64,000 nucleotides of DNA, taken from NCBI GenBank assembly GCA_024679065.1, contig JAGIQG010000014.1:11036001-11100000 (forward strand), read 5' to 3'. Under the pieces are notes generated by a model, which was not told the origin of the DNA, did not search any database, and saw nothing but the letters and a program-made list of their open reading frames with translations. The position numbers were made by a program, and so were the translations under genes. This DNA is from Sphyrna mokarran (taxonomy: Eukaryota). Below, one piece after another: positions 1,156 through 38,654 of the stretch (position 1 is its first letter; each line of letters opens with the position of its first letter).

Positions 1156-4100
1156 ATGAAATAGTCACTGCTTGGGACAGGATGCTGCCAAGATAATTGA
1201 ACTGGTCCACTTCCTGTAGTTTCTGCCTTTTGATGGTGATTATGGGTTCTGTGTACGGTGCATGAGGAGCAGGATGGTGCATGACTTCAGTCTTTTTAAT
1301 GTTGATGGTGAGTCCAAAGTTGTCACAAGCTGTAGAAAATTTGTCCATATTGACTTGCATCTCTGGCTGTGAACCAGCATACAGGCACAGTCATTGGCAA
1401 AGAGGAAATCTCTCAGAACAGTCTCTTTCACTTTGGTAATAGTTTAAAGTCTCCTCAGGTTGAAGTGAAGAGTTTCCCATCCACTCTGTACTTGAGGCTG
1501 ATTCCAGCAACACTGTCTTGGAAGGCATCATTCAACATGGCAGTAAACATCATGCTGAACAGTGTGGGTGCGAGCACACAGCCCTGTTTGACGCCATTGG
1601 TGATTGGGAATGCCTCAGAGAATTCTCCACCATCCAGTACTCAGGCCATCATGTAACTGGCATACTATCTGAATAAATTTGGGAGGGCAGCCGAACTTTG
1701 ACATGATCCTCCACAGGCCTTGTCGGCTTACAGTGTCAACGGCTTTTGCGAGGTCAACAAAGAACATAGAACATTACAGCGCAGTACAGGCCCTTCGGCC
1801 CTCGATGTTGCACCGACCAGTGGAACCAATCTAATGATCCTCTAACCCAAACTATTCCAATGTTATCCATATGCCTATCCACTGACCATCTGAACACTCT
1901 TAAAGTTGGCAAGTTCACAACTGCTGCAGGCAGGACACCCATGCCCTCTGAGTAAAGAACCCACCTCTGATATCCATCCTATAATTACCACCACTTAATT
2001 TAAAACTATGTCCCCTCATGTTAGCCATCACCATCTGAGGAAAAAGGTTCTCACTGTCCACCCTATCTAACCCTCTGATCATCTTGTATGCCTCAATTAG
2101 GTCATTTCTTAACCTTCTTCTCTCTAACGAAAACAACTTCAACTCCCTCAGCCTTTACTCATAAGACTTCCCACCATACCAGGCAACCTCCTGGTAAACC
2201 TCCTCTGCACCCTCTCCAATGCCTCCACATCTTTCTTATAATGCGGCGACCAGAACTGTACGCAATACTCCAAGTGCGGCCGCACCAGAGTTTTGTACAG
2301 TTGCAACATGACCTCATGGCTCCGAAATTCAATCCCTCTACCAATAAAAGCTAACACACCGTACACCTTCTTAACAACCTTAACAACCTGGGTGCCAACT
2401 TTCAGGGATCTTTACTCATGTACACCGAGATCTTTGCTCATCGACACTACCAAGAGTCCTTCTATTAACCCTATATTCTGTACTCCTGTTACTCTTTGCA
2501 AAGTGAATCACCTCACACTTTTCCGCATTAAACTCCATTTGCCACCTCTCAGCCCAGCTCTGCAGCTTATCTATGTCCCTCCGCAAACTGTAACATCCAT
2601 CCTCATCGTCTACAACTCTTCCGACTTTGGAGTCATCAGCAAATTTACTAACCCATCCTTCTACACCCTCATCTAGGTAATTTATAAAAATGACAAATAG
2701 CAATGGCCCCAAAACAGATCCCTGAGGACCACTAGTAACTGAACTCCAGGTTGAATATTTCCCATCAACCACCACCCTCTGTCTTCTATCAGCTAGCCGA
2801 TTCCTGATCCAAACTATGAAATTAGCCACAATCCCGTGTATCTGCATTTTCTACCATGAGGAACCTTATCAAACGTTTTGCTAAAATCCATATACACCAC
2901 ATCAACTACCTTACCCTTATCTACCTCTTTGGTCACCTTTTCAAAAAACTCGATAAGGTTTGTGAGGCACCATCTACCCTTCACAAAATCGTGTTGACTA
3001 TCCCTAATCAATTTATTTCTTTCTAGATGATTATAAATCCTGTCCCTTATAATTCTTTCCAAAAGTTTGCCCACAACAGAAGTAAGTTTCACCGGTCTAT
3101 AATTCCTAGAATAGTCTTTACTCTGCTTCTTGAACAAAGGGAAAACATTTGGTATCCTTCAGTCTTCCAACACTATACATTAGCCAATGACAACATGAAG
3201 ATCAAAGCTAAAGGCTCTGCAATCTCCTCGCTAGCCTCCCAGAGAATCCTAGGGTAAATTCCATCTGGCCCAGGGGACTTATCTATTTTCATACTCTCAA
3301 GAACAAAGATTGTGGAGATCTCACAATTCTGCTCCTGACACTTCTCCTGAAGTTGGAGTGCAGCAAAAATCATGTCAGTGGTCCCACGACCTTTGCAGAA
3401 GCCTCACTGTGACTCGGGAATCATGTCTAGCTCCAGATGAGTGACCAGATGATTTAGTCGGACTCTTGCGAGAGTTTTTCCTGTGACGGAGAGCAGCGAG
3501 AGTCCTCGGTGGTTGTCGCATACTTGCCGATTGCCCTTCCTCTTGTAGAGGTGTACGAGGGAGGCATCTTTAGGTTCCTGAGAAATGGATCCTTGCTTCC
3601 AAAAGGACTGGAACAACTGGGTGAGCTTCTCGATAAGTGCAGGACTTGCAGCTTTATAGATTTCTGCGGGTATGGCATCTGCCCCTGGGGCTTTGCCACT
3701 GGATAGCTGGCTTACACTTTCGTGATTTCGGCTACTACTGGTGGGTCATCCATGGCGCTGTTGACATCAACCTGGGGAATCCTGTCTATTGTCTCATCGT
3801 TAATGGATGAAGGTCAGTTGAGGATGGCTTCGAAGTGTTCAGCCCATCTTTGCAAGATCTGAGCCTTCTCTGTAACGAGAGTTGTGCCATCTGTACTCAG
3901 GAAGGGGGAATTCCTGAGAGATTGAGGTCCATAAGAGTGTTGAGGGCTTCATAGAACCGTTTCAAATCATTTCTGTCAGCGTATCCCACATTTCATTTGC
4001 CTTGTTGCTCGGCCAGGCATCCCGCATTTTAAGTAGTTTATTCTGGACTATCCTGCGGGCACTGATAAAAGCATTTTTCTTGGTAGTTGAAGGTAGTTTG

Positions 4101-5390
4101 TTCTGACAGGCCCTATGAAGATAATGCTTTTCAACAAGTATAGCCTGTATCTCCTCATCATTCTCATCGAACCAATCATGCTGCTTACGGTTAGAAGGCC
4201 TGAGCATCTTCAGCGCAGATGTACCGATAGCATCCCTGAAGCATTCCCAGTCATCCTCAGCGCTGCCTGCAAGATGTAGGTCAGCAAGCTTGATTTCTAA
4301 GTCTTCAGCCAGTGCTGAAGCTATGCTGGAGTTCTTTAGCTTGGTCGCATTGATTCTTTTCATAACCTTACTTCCTTGTGGTCACCTCTTGGGTCTGATG
4401 TAGAGTCTCATTTTGGAGACAACGAGTCTGTGATGTGTCCAGCAGTGAGCATCGCATGTGGTTTTGGTTACTCTGACATGCTGCCTGTCTTTTCCCTTGA
4501 CAATGACATAGTCGTATAGATGCCGAGGCTTAGAGCGGGGGTGCATCCAGAAGGTCTTGTTACACATAGACAGACAGAAGGCTGTATTGGTGATGAAGAG
4601 TTTGTGTGCTTCGGTAAGAGGAGACCGTTACTGTTACACATGCCCACTCCATGTCTCCCAATGACTCCCTGCCAGATTGCAGAGTCACACTCTACCCTTG
4701 CATTGAAATCGCCAAGGAAGAGTCATACTAAGGCTATTCTTCTCTCTGGTCTCTCTGCTGTAGGATTGTCCAAAAGCGTGCGCACATTCCAAGTGCTAAT
4801 GGTGAGTGGTGTCGGCTTGTGTTTTATTTTGTTTGTTCAACATAGGATCCCCGTCAGCAGTGGTAAATTGGCCAGTGTGTAGTGAAGCAGGGCACCTTTC
4901 CTAACCCCTTCCTCATCCTACGGAGGTGAGCAGTGCATTCCTGAAGAGGATTGCTCAGTTGCCCAGGTAGACGCCGAGTTCCTCTGATGCTTCGGTCAGC
5001 GAAGAACGCCTGCATGCAAATCCGTGACTACAGCTCCCAGTGTATCCGTACCTGCCGCTTCGCCACGGCGCTTGCAAACACCGCTTTCTTGACTATTGAA
5101 CTTTCCAACGATTCCGTCCACTCAATCTGCTGGGCTCTGTCTTCGCTTCCTGGGATAGACAACTTCCCATCTCGGGGGGGGGCGGGGAAGCTGTTGAGAC
5201 CCATCTGCTACTCTCACCTGGTTTAGCCGGCTTGTCGAAGCGGTTGCCGGGGGTGCTGTCGCGTGCAAACAGCGGAGCGACAGATGAGAGCTGAGTGCTA
5301 GGTGGGGACAAACCGCCCTGAAAGCATGCAACCCCCACCAGAGGTACCCTGACACCCCATGTACCCTGGTCAAGTACCAACCCACTCAAG
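1156..5390 (-). mobile_element. Decayed RTE-clade LINE with 5' UTR, endonuclease and RT, interrupted by a CR1 insertion at ~1763-3301
   Basis: Minus-strand fragments TWNVRTL (endonuclease start), [87 protein letters not shown]. Many frameshifts. Confidence 0.85.
1763..3301 (-). mobile_element. 5'-truncated CR1-like LINE nested in the RTE element
   Basis: KSPGPDGIYPRIL, NYRPVKLTS, YMDFSKTFDKVPH, KFADD, RPHLEYC on the minus strand. Flanked by AACAAAG at 1756-1762 and 3302-3308. Confidence 0.92.
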
Positions 5391-5580
5391 AGCAGCTTCT
5401 TCCCTGCTGCTGTCAGACTTAACCTTGCGTTAAGTTGAACTTTCTCTACACCCTAATTGCGACTGTGACATTACGTTCTGCACTCTTCTGTTTCCTTCTC
5501 TATGAAGGGTATGTTTTGTCCGTAAAGCGCACAAGAAACAATACTATTCACCGTACACGTGGCAATAATAAAATCAAATT
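5388..5580 (+). mobile_element. Rex1/Babar-like LINE 3' end
   Basis: Similar to the 3' end at 47020-47245 (caagaacagcttcttccctgctgc...gcaataataaaatcaaa). Confidence 0.6.
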
Positions 5581-5589
5581 TCTGGAAAG

Positions 5590-6930
5590 GTAGGGAAGTT
5601 GCACGTAGAGCCGTTAAGGTAGACAAATCGCCGGGGCTGGGTAGATCTATGCCAGGTTACTGAGGGAGGCTAGGGAAGAAATAGCTGGGGCCTGAACAAA
5701 TATCCTCACATCCTCTTTGAACACAGGCTTCAAAAAAATGTTGCTTCCTTTTTCAAGAAAGGAAACCGGGATAATCCAGGAAATTATCGGGCAAGACTTG
5801 TTTACCATAGTGCAATTTAGGAAAACCCAATGCTTCCCCCTTCGCTATATTGACATTATTTAGAGCATTCAAACATCTGTCTGTGACCTCAACATCAGTC
5901 ATGTCCTCCTCCTTGATGAATACTGATATAAAGTACCCATTAAGGATCTCACCCACTTCCTGAGGGTCCACATTACAACTTCTCTTCCTTGTCCTTGAGA
6001 GAGCCAACTCTTTCCCTTGTGACCCTCCCTCTCCTAATAGATGCATAAAAAGCCTTGGGATTCTCCTTGACCCTGTTTGTTAAAGATATTTCATGGCTCC
6101 TTTAAGCTTTCCTCATTCCATATTGAAGTTACTTTCTACTTTCTCTCTACTCCGCGAGGGCTTTGTCAGTTTTTAGTTGCGTAGACTTATTGTATGCTTC
6201 CTGTTCTCTTTTGACCAACTTTACAATATCCTCTTGTCGTCCGTGGTTCCTGAATCCTGTCACTTCAATTCTTCAGTTTTTTTTCGCAGGGACCTAGCTG
6301 TCCTGCACTCCAATCAGCCGGCCTTTAAAATCCTTCTAAGTGTCAGACATGGATTTGCCCTCAAAAAGCTGCTCCCAATCCACCTTCCCCAGTTTCGGTT
6401 TAATTTGGATGTATTTGGCCGTTGCCCAATTAAAGCACCCTCACTGAGAGTGAATCTTGTTTTTATCCATGACTGCCCAAAATCTTTTGGAATTACGGTT
6501 GCGAAGCCCAGAATTCTCCCCCCCTGAAACATTGACCTCCTGGCCTGGCTCATTCCCCAATAACAAGTCTGTGTGACCCCCTTCTTGGTTGGATTGGTAA
6601 CTTGCTGTATCAAAAAGCCCTCCTGGACACATCTAACAAAGTGTTCTCCACCTGAGCTGTAAGGAAGTCCCAGTGAGTATGGGGGAAATTTAAAGTCAGC
6701 TATCACAAATACCCCTGCTTTTTTTTCACACCTTTCCAGTAGCTGATTACACGTCTGTTCCTCTGTCTCCTACGGGCTGTTGGGAGGTTCATAATTCTCC
6801 CAACACTGTGATTTCACCCTTCTTATTCCTGAGCTCCACTCATAATTCTCACTGTGAGATCCCTGCAATGTGTTCCCCCTCACACAGTGATGTGCTCACA
6901 AATCAGCAACATAACACCCCCCACCCCTTC
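5590..6930 (-). mobile_element. Older CR1-like ORF2 fragment (endonuclease/linker) with a short inverted piece at ~5610-5790
   Basis: Minus-strand CVQEGFLIQQVTNPT, LLLGNEPGQ, GEILNGYFISVF. The plus-strand continuation reads VDKSPG...REAREEIAGA. Confidence 0.7.
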
Positions 6931-6932
6931 TA

Positions 6933-7611
6933 TCCCTGAAAGTAGGCAGTCAAGTGGATAAAGTTGTTAAGAAGGCTTATGGAGTCTTAGCTTTTATTGG
7001 TAGGGGGATTGAATTTAGGAGCCGCAGCATCATGTTGCAGCTGTACAAAACTCTAGTGCGGCCGCACTTGGAGTAGTGTGTGCAGTTCTGGTCGCCACAT
7101 TATAAGAAAGATGTGGAGGCATTGGAGCGGGTACAGAGGAGGTTTACTAGGATGTTGCCTGGTATGGAGGGCAGGTCCTATGAAGAGAGGTTGAAGGATT
7201 TGAGGTTGGTTTCGTTAGAAAGGAGGCGGCTAAGAGGGGATCTTATTGAAGCATATAAGATGATTAGAGGTTTAGATAGGGTGGACAGTGATAGCCTTTT
7301 TCCTAGGATGGAGGAAGCTAGCACGAGGGGACACAGCTTTAAATTAAGGGGTATGAGTTATAGGACGGATATCAGAGGTAGGTTCTTTACTCAAAGAGTG
7401 ATTAGGGAGTGGAATGCCCTGCCTGCAGCTGTTGTATATGCGCCAAGTTTGGTGGCGTTTAAGAGGTTAGTTGATAAGTATATGGAAGAGAAGGGAATGG
7501 TTTAGTTAGGAGGGGCATTGCTTTTTATTTTGGTCGGCACAACATCGAAGGCCGAAGGGCCTGTTCTGTGCTGTATTGTTCTATGTTCTATGTTCTATGT
7601 TCTATGTTCTA
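6933..7611 (+). mobile_element. CR1-like LINE 3' fragment
   Basis: ORF 7080-7505 QFWSPHYKKDVEALERVQRRFTRMLP and a (ttctatg)n tail. Confidence 0.93.
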
Positions 7612-7764
7612 TTTCACCTTCTGTCCCATCTAAAATAATGATATCCGGGAACGTTAAGCTGCCAGTCCCGTCCCTCCTTCAAACATGCCTCTGTAATTAT
7701 CCGTTCAGAATTTTCTGTTTCAGATTACGGTATTTGAATGAATTCACTTTTATCTTTGTAATGC

Positions 7765-8890
7765 ACTGGGTGCTCAGTCCCGGGAGGGGTGGGCAGTTGG
7801 GTGGGTGGGATGTGGATGGGGCTGGGGGGAAGCGGGGAGGGTGCAGTCAGTGCTGAGGCTCTGCCCCGCGAGGGGGTTCAGTGCTGGGTGCTGTGTCCCG
7901 GGAGTGGGGGGTCAGTGCTGTGTGCTGTGTCCCCGGGAGGGGGGTCAGTGCTGGGTGCTGTGTCCCGGGAGGGGAGGGGCTGGGAGGGGGGGTCAGTGCT
8001 GGTGCTGTGTCCCGGGAGGGGTGGGGTCAGGGGGGTCAGTGCTGGGTGCTGTGTCCGGGAGGGGGGGTCAGTGCTGAGTGCTGTGTTCCGGGAGGGGAAG
8101 GGTCAGTGCTGGGTGCTGTGTCTCGGGAGCCTGTGTCGGAGGGGTGTCAGTGCTGGGTGCTGTGTCCCGGGAGGGGGGGGTCAGTGCTGGGTGCGGTGTC
8201 CCGGGAGGGGAGGGGTCAGTGCTGGGTGCTGTGTCCCGGAGGGGAGGGGTCAGTGCTGGGTGCTGTGTCCCTGGAGGGGGGGGGGTCAGTGCTGGTGCTG
8301 TGTCCCGGGAGGGGGGGTCAGTGCTGGGTGCTGTGTCAGGGGGGGTCAGTGCTGGGTGCTGTGTCCCGGGAGGGGGGGGTCAGTGCTTGGTGCTGTGTCC
8401 CGGGAGGGGGGTCAGTGCTGGGTGCTGTGTCCCCGGGAGGGGGGGTTCAGTGCTGGTGCTGTGTCCCGGGAGGGGGGGGGTCAGTGCTGGTGCTGTTCCA
8501 GGGGGGGTGTGCTGGGTGCTGTGTCCTGGAGGGGGAGGGGGGGTTCTGTGCTGGGTGCTGTGTCCTGGGGGGGAGGGGAGGGGGGGGGGTCAGTGCTGGT
8601 GCTGTGTCCTGGGAGGGGGGAGAGGGGGGGATCTGTGCTGGGTGCTGTGTCCCGGGAGGGGTGTAAGTGTGGGTGCTTGTTCCAGGAGGGAGGAGTCAGT
8701 GCTGGGTGCTGTGTCCGGGAGGGGTGTAAGTGGTGGGTGCTTGTCCCAGGAGGGAGGAGTCAGTGCTGGGTGCTGTGTCCCGGGAGGGGGGGGGGTCAGT
8801 GCTGGGTGCTGTGTCCCGGGAGGGGTGTAAGTGGTGGGTGCTTGTCCCAGGAGGGAGGAGTCAGTGCTGGGTGCTGTGTCCCAGGGTGGG
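7765..8890 (+). repeat. G-rich minisatellite, ~30-35-bp unit GTCAGTGCTGGGTGCTGTGTCCCGGGA(G)n
   Basis: Visible tandem copies with variable G-runs, just upstream of the TM exon. Confidence 0.93.
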
Positions 8891-8992
8891 TGGAGGGTGG
8901 GGTGTGAGGGAGGAGGCAGTGTTACAAGCTCTATCCTATCGCTGTTCTGAGAGTGGAACTTGTCCGATTATCTCCTCTCTCCTTTCACACAG

Positions 8993-9084
8993 AGGCACTG
9001 CAGCCCCCTGAAATCTGTTACGTGTTGGATGCTGTCCTCTTTGTCTACGGGATTGTGTTAACTGCTCTCTATTGCCGTCTGAAG
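8993..9084 (+). CDS. FCER1G: FCER1G-like transmembrane exon (92 bp, phase 1 to 0)
   Basis: Acceptor tctcctctctcctttcacacag, donor AAG|gtaagt. Encodes [30 protein letters not shown] with the dimerisation Cys, the intramembrane Asp and the YCRLK signature. Confidence 0.95.
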
Positions 9085-12000
9085 GTAAGTTTAAACAGGG
9101 CATGAATGAGTGACAGTGTGAGGGAGCTGGATTAACATCAGTCGAGATACAGTCAGTAACCCAGGGTGCTGGGGGAGAGGGGTTACTGAGTGACAGTGTG
9201 AGGGAACTGGATTAACATCAGTAGAGATACAGTCAGTAACACAGGGTGCTGGGGGAGAGGGGTTACTGAGTGACAGTGTGAGGGAGCTGGATTAACATCA
9301 GTAGAGATACAGTCAGTAACACAGGGTGCTGGGGGAGAGGGGTTACTGAGTGACAGTGTGAGGGAGCTGGATTAACATCAGTAGAGATACAGTCAGTAAC
9401 ACAGGGTGCTGGGGGAGAGGGGTTACTGAGTGACAGTGTGAGGGAGCTGGATTAACATCAGTAGGGATACAGTCAGTGATACAGGATGCTGGGGAGAGGG
9501 GTTACTGAGTGACAATGTGAGGGAGCTGGATTAACATCAGTAGGGATACAGTCAGTGATACAGGATGCTGGGGAGAGGGGTTACTGAGTGACAGCGTGAG
9601 GGAGCTGGATTAACATCAGTAGAGATACAGTCAGTCACACAGGGCTCTGGGGGAGAGGGGTTACTGAGTGACAGTGTGAGGGAGCTGGATTAACATCAGT
9701 AGAGATACAGTCAGTGACACAGGGTGCTGGGGGAGAGGGGTTACTGAGTGACAGTGTGAGGGAGCTGGATTAATATCAGTAGAGATACAGTCAGTAACAC
9801 AGGGTGCTGGGGGAGAGGGGTTACTGAGTGACAGTGTGAGGGATCTGGATTAACATCAGTAGAGATACAGTCAGTGACACAGGGCGCTGGGGAAGAGGGG
9901 TTACTGAGTGACAGTGTGAGGGAGCTGGATTAACATCAGTAGAGATACAGTCAGTGACACAGGGTGCTGGGGGAGAGGGGTTACTGAGTGACAGTGTGAG
10001 GGAGCTGGATTAACATCAGTAGAGATACAGTCAGTAACACAGGGCACTGGGGGAGAGGGGTTACTGAGTGACAGTGTGAGGGAGCTGGATTAACATCAGT
10101 AGAGATACAGTCAGTGACACAGGGCGCTGGGGGAGAGGGGTTACTGAGTGACAGTGTGAGGGAGCTGGATTAACATCAGTAGAGATACAGTCAGTGACAC
10201 AGGGCGCTGGGGGAGAGGGGTTACTGAGTGACAGTGTGAGGGATCTGGATTAACATCAGTAGAGATACAGTCAGTAACACAGGGTGCTGGGGAGAGGGGT
10301 TACTGAGTGACAGTGTGAGGGAGCTGGATTAACATCAGTAGAGATACAGTCAGTAACACAGGGTGCTGGGGGAGAGGGGTTACTGAGTGACAGTGTGAGG
10401 GAGCTGGATTAACATCAGTAGAGGTACAGTCGGTGACACAGGGTGCTGGGGGAGTGGGGTTATTGAGTGACAGTGTGAGGGAGCTGGATTAACATCATTA
10501 GAGATACATTCAGTGACACAGGGTGCTGGGGAGAGGGGTTACTGAGTGACAATGTGAGGGAGCTGGATTAACATCAGTAGAGATACAGTCAGTGACACAG
10601 GGTGCTGGGGGAGAGGGGTTACTGAGTGACAATGTGAGGGAGCTGGATTAACATCAGTAGAGATACAGTCAGTGACACAGGGTGCTGGGGAGAGGGTTAC
10701 TGAGTGACAATGTGAGGGAGCTGGATTAACATCAGTAGAGATACAGTCAGTCACACAGGGTGCTGGGGGAGAGGGGTTACTGAGTGACAGTGTGAGGGAG
10801 CTGGATTAATATCAGTAGAGATACAGTCAGTAACACAGGGTGCTGGGGGAGAGGAGTTACTGAGTGACAGTGTGAGGGATCTGGATTAACATCAGTAGGG
10901 TTTAGCAGATGAGTTCCAGTATTAGGGAGTGAGGAACCTCCATAATTTTAAGTAAACAGTTGGCTGCTGAGACTCAGTTTGATAAATGGGAGACATGGGG
11001 AGGGATTGCTTATATTTTTGAAAGCTGCAGAGTAGGTGATGGCGGAAGAGCCAATGTCTGAACCTCACACACAAAAGTGAATTAATTCTCTTCTCCTATT
11101 CACTCAGCTCCAGATGAACAAGAAGGCAAAGGCACTTTCTCAGGGCTCGGAATATGAGGTAAAGAAATTACAAGTTAGGGGGGAGTGAGGGGTGCTGAAC
11201 CAGGAACATCAGCATTACACTGGGGAGAAGGTCACTGGCAGCAATAAGACCCCAGTGCTCCATCCCAATACAATCCTGACTCCATTCCAATACAATCCTC
11301 AATCCATTCCAATACAATCCTCACTCTGCTCTATCCCAAAACAATCCTCACTCCGCTCCATCCCAATACAATCCTCACTCCATTCCAATATAATCCTCAC
11401 TCCGCTCCATCCCAATGCAATCCTCACTCCGCTCCATCCCAATACAATCCTCACTCCGCTCCATCCCAATACAATCCTCACTCCGCTCCATCCCAATACA
11501 ATCCTCACTCCGCTCCATCCCAATACAATCCTCACTCCGCTCCATTCCAATACAATCCTCACTCCGCTCCATTCAAATAAAATATTCACTCCGCTCCATT
11601 CCAATACAATCCGCACTCAGCTCCATTCCAATACAATCCTCACTCTGCTCCACCCCAATACAATCCTCACTCTGCTCCATCCCAATACAATCCTCACTCC
11701 GCTCCATTCCAACGCAATTCTCACTCCGCTCCATTCCAATACTATCCTCATTCCGCTCCATTCCAATACAATCCTTATTCCACTCCATTCCAATACAATC
11801 CTCACTCAGCTCCATTCCAATACAATCCTCACTCCGCTCCATCCCAATACAATCCTCACTCCGCTCCATTCAATAATCCTCATCCCCATCCCAATACAAT
11901 CCTCACTCTGCTCCATTCCAATCATCCACTCCTCCATCCAATACATCCTCATCCGCTCCATTCCAATACTATCCTCACTCCGCTCCATCCAATACAATCC

Positions 12001-15000
12001 TCACCCGCTCCATTCCAATACAATCCTCACTCCGCTCCATTCCAATACAATCCTCACTCCGCTCCATTCCAATACTATCCTCACTCCGCTCCATTCAATA
12101 CAATCCTCACTCCGCTCCATCCCAATACATCCTCACTCCGCTCCATTCCAATACAATCCTCACTCCGCTCCATCCCAATACTATCCTCACTCCGCTCCAT
12201 CCAATACAATCCTCACTCCGCTCCTTCCAATAACCTCTCCGCTCCATCCCAATAATCCTCACTCCGCTCCATTCCAATACAATCCTCACTCCGCTCCATT
12301 CCAATACACTCTTCACTCCACTCCATTCCAATACAATCCTCACTCCGCTCCATCCCAATACTATCCTCACTCCGCTCCATTCCAATACTATCCTCACTCC
12401 GCTCCATTCCAATACTATCCTCACTCCGCTCCATCCCAATACAATCCTCACTCCGCTCCATTCCAATACAATCCTCACTCCGCTCCATCCCAATACAATC
12501 CTCACTCCGCTCCATCCCAATACAATCCTCACTCCGCTCCATTCCAATACAATCCTCACTCCGCTCCATTCCAATACAATCCTCACTCCGCTCCATTCCA
12601 ATACAATCCTCACTCCGCTCCATCCCAATACAATCCTCACTCTGCTCCATCCCAATACAATCCTCACTCCGCTCCATCCCAATACAATCCTCACTCCGCT
12701 CCATCCCAATACAATCCTCACTCCGCTCCATCCCAATACAATCCTCATTCGCTCCATTCCAATACAATCCTCACTCGCTCCATTCCAATACAATCTCCCC
12801 TCCATTCCAACTCTCACTCCTCATTCCAATACAATCCTCACTCCGCTCCATCCCAATACAATCCTCACTCCGCTCCATCCCAATACAATCCTCACTCCGC
12901 TCCATTCCAATACAATCCTCACTCCGCTCCATCCCAATACAATCCTCACTCCGCTCCATTCCAATACAATCCTCACTCCGCTCCATTCCAATACAATCCT
13001 CACTCCGCTCCATTCCAATACAATCCTCACTCCGCTCCATCCCAATACAATCCTCACTCCGCTCCATCCCAATACAATCCTCACTCCGCTCCATTCCAAT
13101 ACAATCCTCACTCCGCTCCATCCCAATACAATCCTCACTCCGCTCCATCCCAATACAATCCTCACTCCGCTCCATCCCAATACAATCCTCACTCCGCTCC
13201 ATCCCAATACAATCCTCACTCCGCTCCATCCCAATACAATCCTCACTCCGCTCCATCCCAATACAATCCTCACTCCGCTCCATTCCAAGCAATTCCACTC
13301 CGCTCCATTCCAATACAATCCTCACTCCGCTCCATTCCAATACAATTCCCAATCAGCTCCATTCCAATACAATCCTCACTCCGCTCCATTCCAATACAAT
13401 CCTCACTCAGCTCCATTCCAATACAATCCTCACTCCGCTCCATTCCAATACAATCCTCACTCCGCTCCATTCCAATACAATCCTCACTCCGCTCCATTCC
13501 AATACAATCCTCACTCCGCTCCATTCCAATACAATCCTCACTCCGCTCCATTCCAATACAATCCTCACTCCGCTCCATCCCAATACAATCCTCACTCCGC
13601 TCCATCCCAATACAATCCTCACTCCGCTCCATTCCAATACAATCCTCACTCCGCTCCATTCCAATGCAATCCTCACTCCGATCCATTCCAATACAATCCT
13701 CACTCCGCTCCATTCCAATACAATCCTCACTCAGCTCCATTCCAATACAATCCTCACTCTGCTCCATTCCAATACAATCCTCACTCCGCTCCATCCAAAT
13801 ACAATCCTCACTCTGCTCCATTCCAATACAATCCTCACTCCGCTCCATCCCAATACAATCCTCACTCCGCTCCATCCCAATACAATCCTCACTCCGCTCC
13901 ATCCCAATACAATCCTCACTCCGCTCCATCCCAATACAATCCTCACTCTGCTCCATCCCAATACAATCCTCACTCCGCTCCATTCCAATACAATCCTCAC
14001 TCCGCTCCATCCCAATACAATCCTCACTCCGCTCCATTCCAACACAATCCTCACTCGCTCCATTCCAATACAATCCTCACTCCCCACACAACCCCCCACA
14101 ACAACCACCCCCACCAAACACCTCCTCACTCCGCTCCATCCAATACAATCCTCACTCCGCTCCATCCCAAACATCTCACTCGCCATCCAATAATCCTCAC
14201 TCCGCTCCATCCCAAAACCTCCCGCTCCATCCCAATACAATCCTCACTCCGCTCCATCCCAATACTATCCTCACTCCGCTCCATTCCAATACAATCCTCA
14301 CTCCGCTCCATTCCAATACACTCTTCACTGCACTCGATTCCAATACAATCCTCACTCCGCTCCATCCCAATACAATCCTCACTCCGCTCCATCCCAATAC
14401 AATCCTCACTCCGCTCCATTCCAATACTATCCTCACTCCGCTCCATCCCAAACAACCTCACTGTCCATTCCAATACAATCTCACTCCGCCCATTCCAATA
14501 CAATCCTCACTCGCTCCATCCCAATCAATCCTCCTCCGCTCCATCCAATACATCCTCACTCCGCCCATCCAAACAACACCCCACCAACCCACCCCCACAA
14601 CACCCCCAACAACCCACCCCCCAAACACCCCACCAAAACCCACCCCCACACAACACCAATACAATCCTCACTCCGCTCATTCCAATACTATCCTCACTCC
14701 GCTCCATTCCAATACTATCCTCACTCCGCTCCATTCCAATACTATCCTCACTCCGCTCCATTCCAATACACTCTTCACTGCACTCGATTCCAATACAATC
14801 CTCACTCCGCTCCATCCCAATACAATCCTCACTCCGCTCCATCCCAATACAATCCTCACTCCGCTCCATCCCAATACAATCCTCACTCCGCTCCATTCCA
14901 ATACAATCCTCACTCCGCTCCATTCCAATACAATCCTCACTCCGCTCCATTCCAATACAATCCTCACTCTGCTCCATTCAATACAATCCTCAAACCGCTC

Positions 15001-18000
15001 CATCCAATACAATCCTCACTCCGCCCATCCCAATACAATCCTCACTCCGCTCCATTCCAATACAATCCTCACTACGCTCCTCCCAACACAATCTCACTCC
15101 GCTCCATCCCAATACAATCCTCACTCCGCTCCATCCCAACACTATCCTCACTCCGCTTCATCCCAACACAATCCTCACTCCGCTCCATCCCAATACAATC
15201 CTCACTCCGCTCCATCCCAATACAATCCTCACTCCGCTCCATTCCAATACAATCCTCACTCCGCTCCATTCCAATACAATCCTCACTCCGCTCCATCCCA
15301 ATACAATCCTCACTCCGCTCCATCCCAATACAATCCTCACTCCGCTCCATCCCAATACAATCCTCACTCCGCTCCATCCCAATACAATCCTCACTCCGCT
15401 CCATCCCAATACAATCCTCACTCCGCTCCATCCCAATACAATCCTCACTCCGCTCCATCCCAATACAATCCTCACTCCGCTCCATTCCAAATTCAGATAC
15501 AAACATTCTTCTATTCAATTCAAAACCATACCTTTCTAACAACGCAACACCTTTCAGCTATCCATTTATTGAATTAGTTCCACTCTGTTCTCTTCTGAAT
15601 ATCCCAGTCACTGTTCCACTTCAAGTATTTGTCTAATTGTCTCTGAAAATTATACTTCTGTATCTCCTTCAACAACTGCATCACAACTTACCGTGTAAAA
15701 ACATTTGATGTATTATTGCCACATGTATTAGTGTACAGCGAAAAGTATTATTGTTTGCACAGACAAAGCACACAGTATATAGAAGAGGATAGGAGAGATT
15801 GCGCAATGTAATATTGCAGTCTTAGCTCGGATTATTGTCATCTCTCCTCATCTCACCCTCTGGTTCTTCAATCGATTCTCTACGATTAGTGTCTCCCCGG
15901 GCATTGACCCTCCTGTCACTGGAAACAGCAAGCTTTACTGTATTTATGATGTTAGACAAAATGATTAAATCTCCACTTAATCTTCACTGCTCTCCAGAAA
16001 GAACAGACACAACTCTTGCTGCCTGTCCTAATCCCTGATTGTACCTCTCTAGAGACCTCAACCTATAACTGCAGCAGAGGTGGGTGAGAGGGCTAATCCC
16101 CCCTCTGATGGGGCAACAGGCTGCCCGGTGTGTGTGAATGGGGAGAGGTGGGTGAGAGGATTTATCCCACCTCCGATAGGGGAACAGACTGCCCGGTGTG
16201 TGTGAATGGGGAGAGCTGGGTGAGAGGGTTAATCCCCCCTCCGATATGGGAACAGAATTCCCGGTGTGTGTGTGTGAATGGGGAGAGGTGGGTGAAAGGG
16301 TTAATCCCCGCTCCGATAGGGGAACAGGCTGCCCTGTGTGTGTGTCAATGCGGAGAGTTGGGTGAGAGGGTTAATCCCCCTCCGATAGGGGAACAGGCTG
16401 CCCGGTGTGTGTGTGAATGGGAGAGGTGGCTGAGAGGTTTAATCCCCCCTCCGATAGGGGAACAGACTGCCCCGCGTGTGTGTGAATGGGGAGGGTGGCT
16501 GAGAGGTTTAATCCCCCCTCCGATAGGGGAACAGACTGCCCGGTGTGTGTGTGTGAATGGGGAGAGGTGGGTGAGAGGGTTATCCCCCTCCGATAGGGGA
16601 ACAGACTGCCCGGTGTGTGTGAATGGGGAGAGGTGGGTGAGAGGGTTAATCCCCCTCCGATAGGGGAACAGACTGCCCGTGTGTGTGTGAATGGGGAGAG
16701 GTGGGTGAGAGGGTTAATCCCCCTCCGATAGGGGAACAGACTGCCCGTGTGTGTGTGAATGGGGAGGGTGGTTGAAAGGGTTAATCCCCCCTCCGATAGG
16801 GGAACAGACTGCCCGGTGTGTGTGTGTGTGGAGAGGTGGTTGAAGGGGTTGATCCCCCCTCCGATAGGGGAACAGGCTGCCTTTCGTGTGTGTCAATGGG
16901 GCGAGGTGGGTGACAGTGTTAATCCCCCCTCCAATTGGGGAACAGGCTGCCCGATGTATGTGTGAATGGGGAGAGGTTGGTGAGAGGGTTAATCCCCCTC
17001 TGATAGGGAAACAGTCTGCCCGGTGTGTGTGTGAATGTGGAGAGGTGGGTGAGAGGGTTAATCCCCCTCCAATAGGCTAACAGTCTTCCCGGTGTGTGTG
17101 TCAATGGGGAGAGGTGGGTGAGAGAGTTAATCCCCCTCCGATAGGGGAACAGGCTGCCCGGTGTGTGTGTCAATGGGCAGAGGTGGGTGAGAGGGTTAAT
17201 CCCCCCTCCGATAGGGGAACAGGCTGTCCAGTGTGTGTGTGTCAATGGGGAGAGGTGGTTGAGAGGGTTAATCCCCCGTCCGATAGGGGAACAGGCTGCC
17301 CGGTGTGTGTGAATGGCGAGAGGTTTGGTGAGACGGTTAATCCCCATCCGATAGGGGAACAGGCTTCCCCGTGTGTGTGTGTGAACAGGGAGAGTTGGCT
17401 AAGGGGGTTAATATCTGTGAGTTGTGTGTTTCACAGGAAATACGAGCCAATCAGAAAGATGTTTATCTTGGACTGAACAGAGGAAAAGGGGATTCTCGGA
17501 AGGAAATGCCGGTGAGTAGTAATTTAAATTCCATCCTATTTTCTCAAAACTCTCAGAAATAGTTTTAAATCTGCTTTCCCCCTTTGATGTAGACAGCACT
17601 GATGGAGCTTTACTCTGTATCTAACCCCGTGCTGTACCTGTCCTGCGAGTGTTTAATGGGGACAGTGCAGAGGGAGATTTACTCTGTATCTAACCCCGTG
17701 CTGTACCTGTCCTGGGAGTGTTTGATGGGGGACAGTGTAGATGGAGCTTTCATTTTCTGTAATTACTACAGACTTGTCCTGAATGAACTCTGGTCACACA
17801 ATCAATCGATGGATTGGAATGTGTGAGATGTGTTGGTAGCATTTACCAAAGTTTAATCTGTCTTCTCCTCTCCTCCCTTGTACAGAAAGAAGAAGGAATC
17901 TACACGGTGAGACCATTCACTCTCTCTCCCTCTCTCTTTCACTTTGTGTAACATTATCTCTAATCTGTCTCTCTCTCTCTCTGTTTCTGTCTCTGTCTCT

Positions 18001-18094
18001 CTGTAAAACATTATCTCTAACCTGGCTGTCTCTGTCTCTCTTCCTCTGCGTTTCTGTCTCTGTCTCTCTGTAAAACTTTATCTCTAAATGCCTG

Positions 18095-18125
<31 letters not shown>

Positions 18126-18445
18126 CTGTTTCCCCTCCTTCTGCGTTTCTGTGTAAAACGTTATCTCTAACCTGCCTGTCTCTCTCTCTCTCTCTCCCTC
18201 TCTGTTTCTGTCTCTGTTACGGTCTCTGTCTCTCTGTAAAACATTATCTCTAAATGCCTGTCTCTCTCTCTCTCTCTCTCTCCCTCTGTCTCTCTCCTTC
18301 TGTGTCTCTGTCTCTGTGTAAAACATTATCTCTAACCTGCCTGTCTCTCTCTCTCTCTCTTTAATCTCTGTCGCAGGGTCTGGAAGGGAGGCAGCTTGAT
18401 ACCTACGAGTCTCTGCAGCCTCAGAAGTTTCACAAGCCGGAGTGA
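8993..18445 (+). CDS. FCER1G: FcR-gamma (FCER1G)-like ITAM adaptor gene, 5' incomplete. Exons 8993-9084, 11108-11158, 17437-17511, 17886-17906, 18377-18445, plus optional 16053-16079
   Basis: Spliced translation (E)[30 protein letters not shown]|[17 protein letters not shown]|[25 protein letters not shown]|KEEGIYT|[22 protein letters not shown]. Closely matches mammalian FcR-gamma as recalled ([24 protein letters not shown]...SYE|KSDGVYT|GLSTRNQETYETL). All junctions are AG/GT and phases are consistent. Confidence 0.92.
9105..10900 (+). repeat. 80-bp tandem repeat, ~22 copies
   Basis: Unit GAGTGACAGTGTGAGGGAGCTGGATTAACATCAGTAGAGATACAGTCAGTAACACAGGGTGCTGGGGGAGAGGGGTTACT. ggttactgag recurs at 9181, 9261, 9341. 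Confidence 0.97.
11108..11158 (+). CDS. FCER1G: FCER1G-like juxtamembrane exon (51 bp, phase 0-0) ending in YE
   Basis: Acceptor ttctcttctcctattcactcag, donor GAG|gtaaag. [17 protein letters not shown] corresponds to mammalian IQVRKAAITSYE. Confidence 0.88.
11255..15490 (+). repeat. 27-bp minisatellite (AATACAATCCTCACTCCGCTCCATYCC), ~150 copies
   Basis: Direct tandem periodicity, seen as 9-aa periodic translations in the ORF track. Strongly C-rich and G-poor on the + strand. Confidence 0.97.
15700..15830 (-). mobile_element. Rex1/Babar-like 3' tail fragment
   Basis: Reverse complement resembles the tails at 5460-5580 and 47120-47245. Confidence 0.45.
16053..16079 (+). CDS. Possible 27-bp in-frame micro-exon (RPQPITAAE)
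   Basis: Branch-like cctaat plus gtacctctctag acceptor, GAG|gtgggt donor, phase 0-0, no stop. The donor coincides with the first unit of the adjacent minisatellite, so it may be fortuitous. Confidence 0.35.
16075..17410 (+). repeat. ~69-bp minisatellite (GGGGAGAGGTGGGTGAGAGGGTTAATCCCCCTCCGATAGGGGAACAGACTGCCCGG(TG)nAAT), ~19 copies
   Basis: Tandem copies. The same family lies inverted at 45250-46580. Confidence 0.96.
17437..17511 (+). CDS. FCER1G: Extra cytoplasmic exon (75 bp, phase 0-0) completing a membrane-proximal ITAM
   Basis: Acceptor gttgtgtgtttcacag, donor CCG|gtgagt. [25 protein letters not shown] joined to the previous exon gives [15 protein letters not shown]. Confidence 0.85.
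17590..17750 (-). repeat. ~2 copies of a second 69-bp satellite (same family as 25810-26470)
   Basis: tttactctgtatctaaccccgtgctgtacctgtcctgggagtgtttgatggggacagtg repeated. Confidence 0.85.
17886..17906 (+). CDS. FCER1G: FCER1G-like 21-bp exon KEEGIYT
   Basis: Acceptor tcttctcctctcctcccttgtacag, donor ACG|gtgaga. Same length and position as the mammalian KSDGVYT exon. Confidence 0.92.
17915..18365 (+). repeat. Compound (CT)n repeat with recurring GTAAAACATTATCTCTAA blocks
   Basis: About 6 units filling the last intron. Confidence 0.85.
18377..18445 (+). CDS. FCER1G: FCER1G-like terminal coding exon [22 protein letters not shown]
   Basis: Acceptor (ct)n-ttaatctctgtcgcag. Completes YTGL-x7-YESL. 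TGA at 18443-18445. Confidence 0.92.
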   Translation, partial: GLEGRQLDTYESLQPQKFHKPE

Positions 18446-18951
18446 GCTGCTGATCTGCCCCTGGCTCCTGTCTCTCAGTGTTGGGAAGTGAAGTGTCGGG
18501 GGGCCAGGAGGGAGTGAGTCAGAGCCAACCACTCTGTGGTCAGACTAACATCAGCAGTGCTTCACCAATCTATATATATCTATCTTCCAGCAATCCAGCT
18601 GCGCTTTGAATACGTGATCTCAGTCAAATGTCAAAAGCACCTCTGAGAGTCAGGCCTCTCTCTCTCTGAGAACAGGAGGCCGTTCAACCCCTCTAGAACT
18701 GTTACTCAGGAACAGGAGGAGGCCCATTCACATCTCCAGACAATTGCAGAAATTTGTGTTAAAATGCTTTTCAGATGCTGTCGGGTGCCTTACACTGAGG
18801 AAGTTGCATTGGGGATGGGAGGCGGGGGGAGGGAGTCAGTGAGGGGCATTTGTGTGGGGTTGGGGAGGTGGCGGGGAGGTGGTTGGGGACAGAAGATGTA
18901 CTGGAAATGCCACAGGCTGTGAAGCTCACCCAGTCAAACAGCTTGCTACTC

Positions 18952-19013
18952 AATAAACTCCCGTCTCCTTTACTCGTTTGCGATTGGATCATAAATTCTA
19001 ATTTTGCAATAAA
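18952..19013 (+). terminator. Candidate polyadenylation signals of the FCER1G-like gene
   Basis: AATAAA at 18952-18957 and 19008-19013, about 500-570 bp after the stop, in unique sequence. Confidence 0.5.
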
Positions 19014-19182
19014 CTAAGCTGAAAAGGAGCCTGTGGTGAAAGAGTTTCCTTGGTCGCATGAACTCATTGTGCGGCCTGGTTTGTGGAAGTGAGGCCTGAG
19101 GCGTTGCAGCTTTAAATACACAAAATACAGGGTTTGGGGTAGGCCACACAGCCCCACAATCCTGCTCCACCATGCAAATAAG

Positions 19183-21684: not shown

Positions 21685-21995
21685 GGACAGTGATAGCCTT
21701 TTTCCTAGGATGGAGGAAGCTAGCACGAGGGGACACAGCTTTAAATTAAGGGGCGATAGTTATAGGACGGATATCAGAGGCAGGTTCTTTACCCAAAGGG
21801 TGGTTCGGGAGTGGAATGCCCTGCCTGCAGCAGTTGTAGATGCGCCAAGTTTGGTGGCGTTTAAGAGGTTAGTTGATAAGTATATGGAAGAGAAGGGAAT
21901 GGTTTAGTTTGGAGGGGCATTGCTTTTCATATTGGTCGGCGCAACATCGAGGGCCGAAGGGCCTGTTCTGTGCTGTAATGTTCTATGTTCTATGT
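21685..21995 (+). mobile_element. CR1-like LINE 3' end
   Basis: ORF 21710-21907 plus (ttctatg)n tail. Confidence 0.9.
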
Positions 21996-22415
21996 TCTAT
22001 ATTTCCCAGTCAGGATGGTGAGTGACTTGGAGGGGAATCTCCAGGATCTGGCGTACGCAGGTATCTGCTGCTCTTGTTCTTCTGGAGAGTAGTGGGCTGG
22101 GTTTGGAAGGTGCTGTCGAAGGAACCTCAGTGAGTTCCTGTAGTGTATGGTGTAGATGGTACACACTGTGCATCGCTGGTGGAGGAAGCGAAAGTTTGTG
22201 GATGGGATGCCAATCAAATGGCTTGGGTATCGAGCTTCTTGAGTATTGTTGGAGCTGCACTCATCCAAGCAAGTGGGGAGCATTCAATTATCCTCTTGAC
22301 ATTTGATGCCTTTGGAAAATCGGGAGGAGGGTTGCTCACTGCAGGATTCCCAGCCTCTAACCTGCCCTGGTATTTATATGGTTGGTCCAGTTCAGTTTCT
22401 GGTCAACGGTAACCT
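21996..22415 (-). mobile_element. Fragment of an older, different L2/CR1-group LINE (ORF2 C-terminus)
   Basis: Minus-strand AAPTILKKLD...LIGIPSTNF..LHQRCTV..CTIYTIHYRNSLRFLRQHLPNP. Clade assignment is tentative. Confidence 0.6.
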
Positions 22416-38612: not shown

Positions 38613-38654
38613 GGGAGAGGTAGCTTCCATAGATATGTTAAGATCTGCTTTCTT

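What the first reader, a model, noticed from the sequence alone, without database searches (positions are those of the whole stretch)
11108..18445. FcR-gamma-like chain with two canonical ITAMs: an intermediate between FcR-gamma and CD3-zeta
Seen: splicing exon 11108-11158 (...SEYE) to exon 17437-17511 ([13 protein letters not shown]...) gives YEEI-x7-YLGL, and the last two exons give YTGL-x7-YESL. Established: mammalian FcR-gamma has one ITAM, CD247 has three, and in both each ITAM is split by a phase-0 intron after Yx. The TM exon here is clearly gamma-type ([19 protein letters not shown], short ectodomain). The extra exon resembles the CD247 exon [27 protein letters not shown] in size, phase and motif spacing. 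Inference: this lineage keeps an ancestral multi-ITAM gamma chain with doubled Syk/ZAP70 docking capacity. I recall an extra ITAM-like motif being reported for amphibian FcR-gamma, so novelty must be checked.
Basis: partly seen in the sequence, partly recalled or inferred. Interest (0 to 1): 0.88.

Follow-up and report, generated by a model that had tools for sequence, protein, structure and literature searches.

The report
Shark FcR-gamma with two ITAMs
This is a shark's version of the immune signalling adaptor FcR-gamma, and it really does carry a second docking motif made by an extra small exon, a design already described in frogs that now looks ancestral for jawed vertebrates.

Summary
The window holds exons 2-6 of a + strand FCER1G (FcR-gamma) gene: 8993-9084, 11108-11158, 17437-17511, 17886-17906 and 18377-18445. 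All have AG/GT borders, and the tail introns are phase 0. The extra 75-bp exon is present in spliced transcript contigs of three organisms from two studies. These show the joint 17511^17886, and in a close relative the join of exon 3 to exon 4. It completes a membrane-proximal YEEI-x7-YLGL motif upstream of the usual YTGL-x7-YESL.

The gene is gamma, not zeta. Automatic RefSeq models give the same six-exon, two-motif tail in sharks, rays and a chimaera, and in all three amphibian orders. The models I examined for amniotes, coelacanth, a bichir relative and teleosts lack the exon.

A six-exon, two-ITAM FcR-gamma is already published for Xenopus, where it was called unique to X. laevis (PMC4536121). 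Two papers state that cartilaginous fish lack the gamma chain (PMC4016189, PMC5742104), and this locus contradicts them.

Verdict: a real feature and a new member of a known kind. Ancestral retention is likely but not proven. Doubled Syk docking is untested. Moderate interest.

The parts
8993..9084 (+). Exon 2: short ectodomain stub with the dimerising Cys, the transmembrane helix with the conserved Asp, and the start of the tail (ends ...YCRLK)
   Evidence: Acceptor AG at 8991-8992 (phase 1) and donor GTAAGT at 9085. Pfam PF11628, E 2.7e-15, 56.2 bits against a cutoff of 25. phmmer gives 151 hits at E<=0.001, with gamma chains on top. The PDB top 5 are Fc-epsilon-RI gamma. Identical over 31 of 31 residues to Mustelus P0151.
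11108..11158 (+). Exon 3: 51 bp, phase 0/0, ends with Y-E, the first two residues of ITAM 1
   Evidence: AG at 11106-11107 and GT at 11159. tblastn match to P0151. The loose end of the X4 contig before 17435 is this exon's 3' end, showing the exon 3 to exon 4 join in a close relative.
17437..17511 (+). Exon 4: the extra 75-bp phase 0/0 cassette exon. It supplies E-I (completing YEEI), the x7 spacer, YLGL and a 12-residue linker
   Evidence: AG at 17435-17436 and donor GTGAGT at 17512. Joint 17511^17886 in X1 and X4 contigs, with depth on the exon in X1, X4 and X21. tblastn to P0151: 22 of 25 residues identical. The same block is the only difference between the Geotrypetes isoforms X1 and X2.
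17886..17906 (+). Exon 5: 21 bp, phase 0/0, ends with Y-T, the first two residues of ITAM 2
   Evidence: AG at 17884-17885 and GT at 17907. 7 of 7 residues identical to P0151. It is the 21-letter side of the X1 joint.
18377..18445 (+). Exon 6, coding part: G-L completes YTGL, then x7, YESL, a C-terminal tail and the stop TGA at 18443-18445
   Evidence: AG at 18375-18376. 22 of 22 residues identical to P0151. X1 contig piece 18376-18579 has 0 mismatches.
18446..19028 (+). 3' UTR with AATAAA at 18952-18957 and 19008-19013
   Evidence: X1 contig pieces 18376-18579 and 18550-19028 have 0 mismatches. The 480-nt contig ends about 15 nt after the second AATAAA.

Best explanation
This is the FCER1G (FcR-gamma) orthologue of a shark closely related to Mustelus. 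Exon 1 was not found in the window. The gene has six coding exons instead of the five of mammals and teleosts. The additional 75-bp exon (17437-17511) is symmetrical in phase and is included in the mature mRNA. Together with the Y-E that ends exon 3 it builds a membrane-proximal ITAM, so each chain carries two ITAMs and a disulfide-linked dimer carries four.

Shown: the exon structure, its splicing into RNA, its conservation, and the gamma identity of the gene.

Inferred from the established biology of FcR-gamma and CD3-zeta: the chain pairs through its TM Asp with basic TM residues of ligand-binding receptors. Src-family kinases then phosphorylate the four tyrosines, and Syk-family tandem SH2 domains dock on each doubly phosphorylated ITAM. 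One chain could therefore recruit two kinases.

Inferred from the distribution: the two-ITAM, six-exon form is the ancestral state of jawed vertebrates. It is kept in chondrichthyans and amphibians and was lost by exon loss in amniotes and ray-finned fishes. Because the exon is a phase 0/0 cassette, skipping it yields a mammal-like one-ITAM chain, and such isoforms are annotated in three other species.
For: Splicing. X1 is the same organism (0 mismatches). Its 542-nt contig has the GT..AG joint 17511^17886, and its depth of 314.8 reproduces the bin depths on exon 4 and exon 5. X4 (second organism, second study) has a contig over 17435-17510 plus 18376-18679, and its loose end equals the end of exon 3. 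X21 (third organism) has a contig over 17485-17510 plus 18376-18448, and its loose end reads K-D-V-Y-H-E-L.

Gamma identity: (best hit S. canicula gamma-like, 94% identity, E 1.3e-11). (five gamma chains at 42-44 bits rank before twelve zeta chains at 37 bits or less). (tree of 36 rows: gamma/zeta split 100/99, window exon 2 inside the shark clade 93/98). (PF11628).

Conservation. The exon is present in 11 of 12 chondrichthyan rows, the exception being the skipped isoform of S. torazame. A strict two-ITAM pattern holds in 8 of 12 chondrichthyan rows and 29 of 38 amphibian rows. The exon is absent in 9 of 9 other rows (coelacanth, reedfish, one teleost, six amniotes); of 277 stored proteins, 41 have two-motif tails. 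40 of these are gamma chains and 37 carry chondrichthyan or amphibian names. The other three are unnamed Logan proteins (P0033, P0188, P0199) that resemble frog, caecilian and salamander chains. The 41st is a zeta chain.

Homology of the exon across clades. The Y1a-Y1b distance is 11 in 23 of 24 sequences, Y2a-Y2b is 11 in 24 of 24, and Y1b-Y2a is 21 in 11 of 24, including sharks, rays, caecilians and Bombina. Each half-motif is most similar to its positional counterpart. Y1b against Y1b scores 5.44 against a column-permuted mean of -5.55, and 19 of 2000 permutations reach it.

Cassette borders. There is a clean 25-residue block between ...Y-E and the 7-residue exon in Geotrypetes X1 versus X2, which are 95 of 95 identical elsewhere. 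The same holds for the Scyliorhinus and salamander pairs.

Against: No functional data: phosphorylation and Syk binding of ITAM 1 are untested.

The Pfam ITAM model (PF02189) reports only the C-terminal motif in the shark proteins, and below its cutoff (11.7-12.8 bits against 22.2). ITAM 1 is not reported at all.

ITAM 1 lacks the D/E/N at -3 of the strict consensus quoted in PMC4536121. The first half-motif departs from YxxL/I in Narcine (M at +3) and Callorhinchus (E at +3), so constraint on it is not universal.

A simple event count favours two gains (chondrichthyans, amphibians) over three or more losses.

The runs are labelled RNA only as a guess. The spliced joints are what argue for RNA. 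Contigs cannot give isoform ratios and drop rare variants, so a skipped isoform in this species is not excluded.

Exon 1 was not found in the window.

The tree used exon 2 alone for the window and P0151 as a stand-in for the full-length protein.
Confidence: 0.75

Rival explanations
1. Convergence: the extra ITAM exon arose independently in chondrichthyans and in amphibians, for example by duplication of an ITAM half-exon. The ancestral gamma chain had one ITAM, as in mammals and teleosts.
For: On the accepted vertebrate tree this needs two gains against at least three losses (ray-finned fishes, coelacanth, amniotes), using the distribution. PMC4536121 describes the Xenopus exon as an 'emergence' and a unique feature.
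Against: The exon lies in the same intron with the same phase 0/0 and the same borders (after Y-E, before the 7-residue exon) in a shark, a caecilian and salamanders. The tyrosine spacing 11/21/11 is identical in sharks, rays, caecilians and Bombina. Similarity outside the constrained Y and +3 positions is position-specific, and 19 of 2000 permutations reach it. A Y-E or Y at the end of exon 3 persists in one-ITAM chains of coelacanth, alligator, turtle and snakes.
Confidence: 0.2
2. The exon is a regulated or minor cassette. The main product in this shark is the one-ITAM, mammal-like chain, and the two-ITAM form is a variant.
For: The exon is 75 bp and phase 0/0, so skipping keeps the frame. 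Exon-skipped isoforms are annotated in S. torazame (P0155), Geotrypetes (P0162) and Lissotriton (P0217).
Against: In one search the only gene contigs of X1, X4 and X21 contain the exon. In X1 the depth on exon 5 (84.8) equals that expected from the single exon-4-containing contig (314.8 x 21/78), leaving no room for a second assembled isoform. Every elasmobranch species except S. torazame is represented by an exon-containing model. For S. torazame only the skipped isoform X2 was returned.
Confidence: 0.1
3. The membrane-proximal motif fits the ITAM pattern but does not work as a Syk-docking ITAM. It may be, for example, a pair of YxxPhi sorting signals or an inhibitory or partial ITAM, so docking capacity is not doubled.
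For: There is no acidic residue at -3. The Pfam ITAM model does not report it. The first half-motif is non-canonical in Narcine and Callorhinchus.
Against: Both tyrosines and the 11-residue spacing are kept in 23 of 24 sequences from two clades separated by the chondrichthyan-osteichthyan split. The second half always keeps YxxL/I. That is the constraint expected of a tandem-SH2 site.
Confidence: 0.25
4. The gene is a CD247-type chain or a separate gamma/zeta paralogue, not the FCER1G orthologue.
For: It has more than one ITAM, and both families share PF11628.
Against: In the tree all 34 gamma rows, including window exon 2, are separated from 2 zeta rows at 100/99, and the internal branching follows the species groups. 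In the PDB search gamma chains rank first. The tail's last two exons match gamma (Y-T|G-L...YESL). Exon 4 has no significant match to zeta.
Confidence: 0.03

Closest known systems
Xenopus laevis / X. tropicalis FcR-gamma (Guselnikov et al. 2003a, cited in and restated by PMC4536121)
   Same: Six exons. The extra exon creates a second ITAM whose first tyrosine module is split by the exon border (PMC4536121, passage in section 3.1). The Xenopus proteins P0191 and P0194 have the same Y1a-Y1b and Y2a-Y2b spacing of 11 and the same block position.
   Different: The linker between the two ITAMs is shorter (16 against 21 residues). Identity to the shark chain is about 44-48%. The paper calls the feature unique to X. 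laevis, whereas here it is seen in a shark and, in database models, across chondrichthyans and all amphibian orders.
RefSeq automatic models of elasmobranch FCER1G (Mustelus asterias P0151, Scyliorhinus canicula P0001, Carcharodon, Stegostoma, Hemiscyllium, Narcine, Mobula, Hypanus, Leucoraja) and Callorhinchus milii V9LFN2 'ITAM-bearing signaling subunit' (P0094)
   Same: Same gene and same exon set. Against P0151, exons 2, 5 and 6 are identical, exon 3 differs at 2 of 17 residues and exon 4 at 3 of 25.
   Different: They are other species. I found no paper describing them. The window's own protein was not returned by the searches.
Mammalian FCER1G (Fc-epsilon-RI gamma; solved in PDB entries 8k7t, 8ywa, 8y81, 8zgs, 8yvu)
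   Same: Ectodomain stub, TM helix with Asp, and the ...YCRLK start of the tail (E 3e-11). The C-terminal ITAM is split after Y-T. The gene falls in the same clade.
   Different: Five exons and a single ITAM (PMC4536121). The 75-bp exon is absent from all 6 amniote rows.
CD247 (CD3-zeta)
   Same: Same Pfam TM family, PF11628. More than one ITAM. [quoted passage not shown]
   Different: Three ITAMs. A different TM/tail junction and a separate clade at 100/99. Lower PDB scores. No significant similarity to exon 4.
Teleost fcer1g and fcer1gl
   Same: Gamma-type TM and C-terminal ITAM.
   Different: One ITAM in every teleost sequence I printed, including an Oryzias protein named 'gamma polypeptide like' (P0264). 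Five exons according to PMC4536121.

Membership tests
FCER1G (FcR-gamma) | Zeta/gamma-type transmembrane segment with a conserved Asp (Pfam PF11628) | tested here: met
   Exon 2 alone: PF11628, E 2.7e-15, 56.2 bits, cutoff 25.
FCER1G (FcR-gamma) | TM and juxtamembrane sequence closer to gamma than to zeta | tested here: met
   In the PDB search the five best matches are gamma (42.3-44.4 bits) and zeta starts at 37.4 bits. In phmmer the top hits are gamma chains, and the three-ITAM chains appear only at E about 2e-4.
FCER1G (FcR-gamma) | Very short ectodomain with one Cys for the disulfide-linked dimer | tested here: met
   Exon 2 encodes about 8 residues before the TM, including the Cys that is invariant in alignment A1. 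Dimer formation itself was not tested.
FCER1G (FcR-gamma) | C-terminal ITAM YTGL-x7-YE(S/T)L split after Y-T by a phase-0 intron, preceded by a 21-bp exon | tested here: met
   Exons 17886-17906 and 18377-18445.
FCER1G (FcR-gamma) | Groups with FCER1G orthologues in a tree that includes CD247 | tested here: met
   gamma/zeta split 100/99, shark clade with window exon 2 at 93/98. Caveat: the window is represented by exon 2 only, and P0151 stands in for the full-length protein.
FCER1G (FcR-gamma) | Conserved neighbourhood (for example NDUFS2 next to FCER1G, as the fused model P0115 suggests) | tested here: inconclusive
   tblastn of P0115 finds only its gamma part in the window.
FCER1G (FcR-gamma), mammalian/teleost form | Five coding exons, one ITAM | tested here: not met
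   There is an additional exon at 17437-17511 and a second motif. This matches the Xenopus six-exon form instead (PMC4536121).
ITAM | YxxL/I-x6-8-YxxL/I | tested here: met
   ITAM 1 is YEEI-x7-YLGL across exons 3 and 4. ITAM 2 is YTGL-x7-YESL across exons 5 and 6.
ITAM | Strict consensus with D/E/N three residues before the first Tyr (as quoted in PMC4536121) | tested here: not met
   This holds for ITAM 1 only, where the residue at -3 is Gly. ITAM 2 has Glu at -3. The Pfam ITAM model reports only ITAM 2, and below cutoff.
ITAM | First tyrosine module split by an exon border | tested here: met
   The border lies after Y-E (11158|17437) and after Y-T (17906|18377). The rule is stated in PMC4536121.
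ITAM | Tyrosine phosphorylation and binding of Syk/ZAP-70 tandem SH2 | not testable with these tools
   Needs biochemistry.
CD247 (CD3-zeta) | Three ITAMs and a zeta-type TM; clusters with zeta | tested here: not met
   Two motifs. The gene is separated from the zeta rows at 100/99.

The most novel reading that the evidence does not exclude
The six-exon, two-ITAM FcR-gamma is the ancestral adaptor of jawed vertebrates. Its ITAM-1 exon is a phase 0/0 cassette that lets cells choose between one and two ITAMs per chain by splicing. Amniotes and ray-finned fishes fixed the skipped form by losing the exon, and the Y-E at the end of exon 3 in several tetrapods and the coelacanth is its fossil. If so, cartilaginous fish, said in print to lack the gamma chain, instead hold its oldest form.
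Probability: 0.55. Interest if true: 0.5.

Novelty: new member of a known kind. Interest (0 to 1): 0.4.

Why it matters
Three statements in the literature I could read need revising.

- A PLoS One analysis (PMC4016189) and a Frontiers review (PMC5742104) say the FcR gamma chain is lacking in cartilaginous fish and arose with bony fish. Here it is present and spliced into RNA.
- The second ITAM of FcR-gamma was presented as unique to Xenopus laevis (PMC4536121). It is shared by sharks, rays, a chimaera and all amphibian orders.
- The one-ITAM mammalian chain then looks derived, not primitive. That bears on how the gamma/zeta family and ITAM multiplicity evolved.

The cassette also offers a natural experiment on how ITAM number per adaptor scales signalling.

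Tried and rejected
Exon 1 (signal peptide). I tried tblastn with four shark proteins, a pattern search for the shark leader, and a scan for short hydrophobic ORFs ending in a phase-1 GT donor. None gave a convincing candidate in 1-8992. The best tblastn matches to the leader lie in a repeated element that also occurs at 21917, 31382 and 40385. Exon 1 is probably upstream of the window. The 542-nt X1 contig leaves about 100 nt for it by my arithmetic.

Synteny. There is no NDUFS2 match. The ten longest non-satellite ORFs gave only reverse-transcriptase fragments and low-complexity matches. Synteny remains untested.

Similarity of exon 4 to zeta. BLASTP against the three-ITAM chain P0129 gave only a 5-residue match, E 0.41. 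I rejected this as evidence of a specific link to a CD247 exon.

Pfam ITAM model. It is too weak on these short motifs to count ITAMs, so I used the pattern instead.

11158 and 17437 are 6280 bases apart, over the 6000-letter limit, and intron 3 is almost all tandem repeat. It is inferred from the X4 loose end and from the length of the X1 contig.

It was not tested.

Literature. Six searches found no paper on a shark FcR-gamma, and one search found nothing on two-ITAM gamma chains in teleosts. led to the fish and Xenopus papers. Yoder 2007 (PMC2049010) is not held. Guselnikov 2003a and 2003b were seen only as citations. Supplements were not opened. Supplementary Table 3 of PMC11929736 (FcR-gamma homologues in lower vertebrates) and Supplementary data 2 of PMC4536121 could bear on the claim that shark gamma chains are undescribed.

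The joined coding sequence of the window's gene was never assembled, typed, searched or folded. Searches used exon 2 alone and exons 4 and 6 separately. The stored RefSeq protein P0151 stood in for the full length.

Full report
**What is in the sequence**

On the + strand the window holds five consecutive coding exons of one small gene:
- 8993-9084: phase-1 acceptor, donor GTAAGT.
- 11108-11158: 51 bp.
- 17437-17511: 75 bp, donor GTGAGT.
- 17886-17906: 21 bp.
- 18377-18445: ends with TGA.

After the last exon comes a 3'UTR with AATAAA at 18952 and 19008. All tail introns are phase 0.

Exon 3 ends in Y-E, and exon 4 begins E-I and contains YLGL eleven residues after that Tyr. Exon 5 ends in Y-T, and exon 6 begins G-L and contains YESL eleven residues on. 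Each has its first tyrosine module split by an intron. The last exon starts at 18377.

tblastn with the RefSeq protein of Mustelus asterias (P0151) hits exactly these five places. Exons 2, 5 and 6 are identical, exon 3 matches at 15 of 17 residues and exon 4 at 22 of 25.

Every search used a single exon or a stored database protein.

**Is the extra exon used?**

The look-up of sequencing runs with the last exon plus UTR found one run (X1) holding 0.99 of the sampled words.

The shorter stretch 16700-19030 was laid.

X1 is the same organism, with 0 mismatches over 18376-18579 and 18550-19028. It has a 542-nt contig at depth 314.8 with a GT..AG joint that, read one place to the right, is 17511^17886. 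The binned depths match what this one contig predicts:

| Bin | Observed depth | Predicted from one contig at 314.8 |
|---|---|---|
| 17402-17479 | 181.6 | 173.5 |
| 17480-17557 | 125.1 | 129.1 |
| Bin holding exon 5 | 84.8 | 84.75 |

X4 is a different organism from a different study, about 90% alike in the UTR. It has a 633-nt contig over 17435-17510 and 18376-18679 with the same joint. Its loose end before 17435 is the 3' end of exon 3, and differs from the window so as to give the residues found in the Mustelus protein. This shows the exon 3 to exon 4 join in a close relative.

X21 is a third organism. Its contig covers 17485-17510 and 18376-18448, and its loose end reads K-D-V-Y-H-E-L, the residues seen in the white shark and epaulette shark proteins.

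X22 showed nothing at the gene.

The runs are labelled RNA only as a guess. The spliced joints, and the high depth in runs of about 100 million letters, are what argue for RNA.

The two sites are 6280 bases apart and the intron is nearly all satellite.

**What gene it is**

- Exon 2 alone matches Pfam PF11628 (E 2.7e-15).
- Against 1.84 billion representative proteins it finds 151 hits at E<=0.001, led by a Scyliorhinus canicula protein named as the gamma subunit.
- Against the PDB, the five best matches are Fc-epsilon-RI gamma chains and the next twelve are CD3-zeta.
- A maximum-likelihood tree of 36 rows separates 34 gamma rows, including the window's exon 2, from two three-ITAM zeta rows at 100/99. 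It puts the window's exon 2 in the shark clade (93/98).
- Exon 4 has no significant similarity to a zeta chain.

The gene is therefore the FCER1G orthologue. It is 'between gamma and zeta' in motif number only.

**How widespread the architecture is**

Two searches of the 5.8-billion-protein collection returned named models (34 of 77 candidates; 539 of 2852 candidates, best 120 listed). I tabulated 59 of them.

| Group | Rows | Result |
|---|---|---|
| Chondrichthyans | 12 | Exon block present in 11; strict two-ITAM pattern in 8 |
| Amphibians (caecilians, salamanders, frogs incl. Xenopus) | 38 | Strict two-ITAM pattern in 29 |
| Others (coelacanth, reedfish, one teleost, six amniotes) | 9 | Exon block in none |

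The chondrichthyan row without the block is the exon-skipped isoform X2 of S. torazame. The other three that fail the strict pattern are:
- Rhincodon, whose model runs off after exon 5.
- Narcine, with M at +3 of the first half.
- Callorhinchus, with E at +3.

The other nine amphibian rows are skipped isoforms, truncated models or alternative 3' ends, and one species annotated without the exon (Rhinophrynus).

40 are gamma chains and 37 of those carry chondrichthyan or amphibian names. The other three are unnamed Logan proteins (P0033, P0188, P0199) that resemble frog, caecilian and salamander chains. The 41st is a zeta chain.

**Is the exon the same exon in both clades?**

Isoform pairs show the same cassette borders. 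Geotrypetes X1 and X2 are identical at 95 of 95 shared residues and differ by one block of 25 residues, lying between ...Y-E and the 7-residue exon. The Scyliorhinus pair differs by 25 residues and the salamander pairs by 23.

In 24 sequences (10 chondrichthyan, 14 amphibian):
- The two tyrosines of ITAM 1 are 11 apart in 23.
- Those of ITAM 2 are 11 apart in all 24.
- The distance between the two ITAMs is exactly 21 in 11, including sharks, rays, two caecilians and Bombina.

I left out the Tyr and +3 positions, which any ITAM must keep. Each of the four half-motifs of chondrichthyans is then most similar to its positional counterpart in amphibians. The diagonal scores are 2.71, 5.44, 22.51 and 6.71, and the highest off-diagonal score is 2.31. 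For the half-motif carried by exon 4, 19 of 2000 column permutations reach the observed score.

The sequences within each clade are related, so this is support, not a probability.

Against this, a bare count needs two gains but at least three losses. I put common descent at about 0.65-0.7.

**What is known**

PMC4536121 (passages read) states three things. [quoted passage not shown] Mammalian and teleost FcR-gamma genes have 5 exons.

PMC4016189 (abstract and the section on cartilaginous fish) and PMC5742104 (Fc receptor section) state that the gamma chain is not found in cartilaginous fish. The present locus, its transcripts and the RefSeq models contradict that.

Six searches found no paper describing a shark gamma chain. 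Only open-access papers and preprints are searched, and supplements were closed.

**Mechanism**

The anatomy is shown. The rest is inferred from what is established for FcR-gamma and CD3-zeta:
- A disulfide-linked dimer forms through the ectodomain Cys.
- The TM Asp pairs with basic TM residues of ligand-binding chains.
- Src-family kinases phosphorylate the tyrosines after receptor clustering.
- Syk-family tandem SH2 domains dock on each doubly phosphorylated ITAM.

With two ITAMs per chain, the dimer would offer four docking sites instead of two. Because exon 4 is a phase 0/0 cassette, splicing could switch between the two forms. Three other species have such isoforms annotated, but in this species only inclusion was seen.

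**Limits**

- Exon 1 was not found.
- Synteny is untested.
- There are no isoform ratios and no functional data.
- Lungfish and non-teleost ray-finned fishes other than the reedfish were not examined.

**Verdict**

This is a real, expressed and conserved feature: a new member (the chondrichthyan one) of a known kind (the six-exon, two-ITAM FcR-gamma of Xenopus). It also corrects two published statements. Interest is moderate.

Noticed in passing
window 7780-8900, 9107-10898, 11280-15490, 16076-17412, 17964-18361: Every intron of this small gene is largely tandem repeat. Intron 1 has a G-rich minisatellite. Intron 2 has an 80-bp unit x22.5. Intron 3 has a 27-bp unit x159 plus a 69-bp unit x19. 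Intron 5 has CT-rich 67-83-bp units. The 27-bp array alone gives a spurious 1461-aa ORF.
   Followed up: partly
window 17583-17750 (intron 4): A roughly 69-bp unit present twice here is matched by very many transcript contigs of all four runs laid, that is four organisms. Summed depths reach several hundred thousand. It looks like an abundant, transcribed interspersed repeat shared among sharks.
   Followed up: no
No evidence for or against.
   Followed up: no
window 36881-37582 (-) and 38608-39471 (+): ORFs with reverse-transcriptase domains (PF00078, E 3e-21 and 2e-18), likely LINE fragments. No other cellular gene was recognised among the ten longest non-satellite ORFs.
   Followed up: partly
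window 7515-7673, 21917-22003, 31382-31465, 40385-40471: One repeated element recurs at these places and gives spurious tblastn matches to the hydrophobic signal peptide of shark gamma chains.
   Followed up: no
window 53206-53305: A run of 100 N.
   Followed up: no
proteins P0115, P0031 (not in the window): Some database models fuse FCER1G to other sequence: P0115 to an NDUFS2-like N-terminus and P0031 to a transposon-like N-terminus. Several 'gamma' models run into introns after exon 2. Automatic annotation of this tiny gene is often wrong.
   Followed up: no
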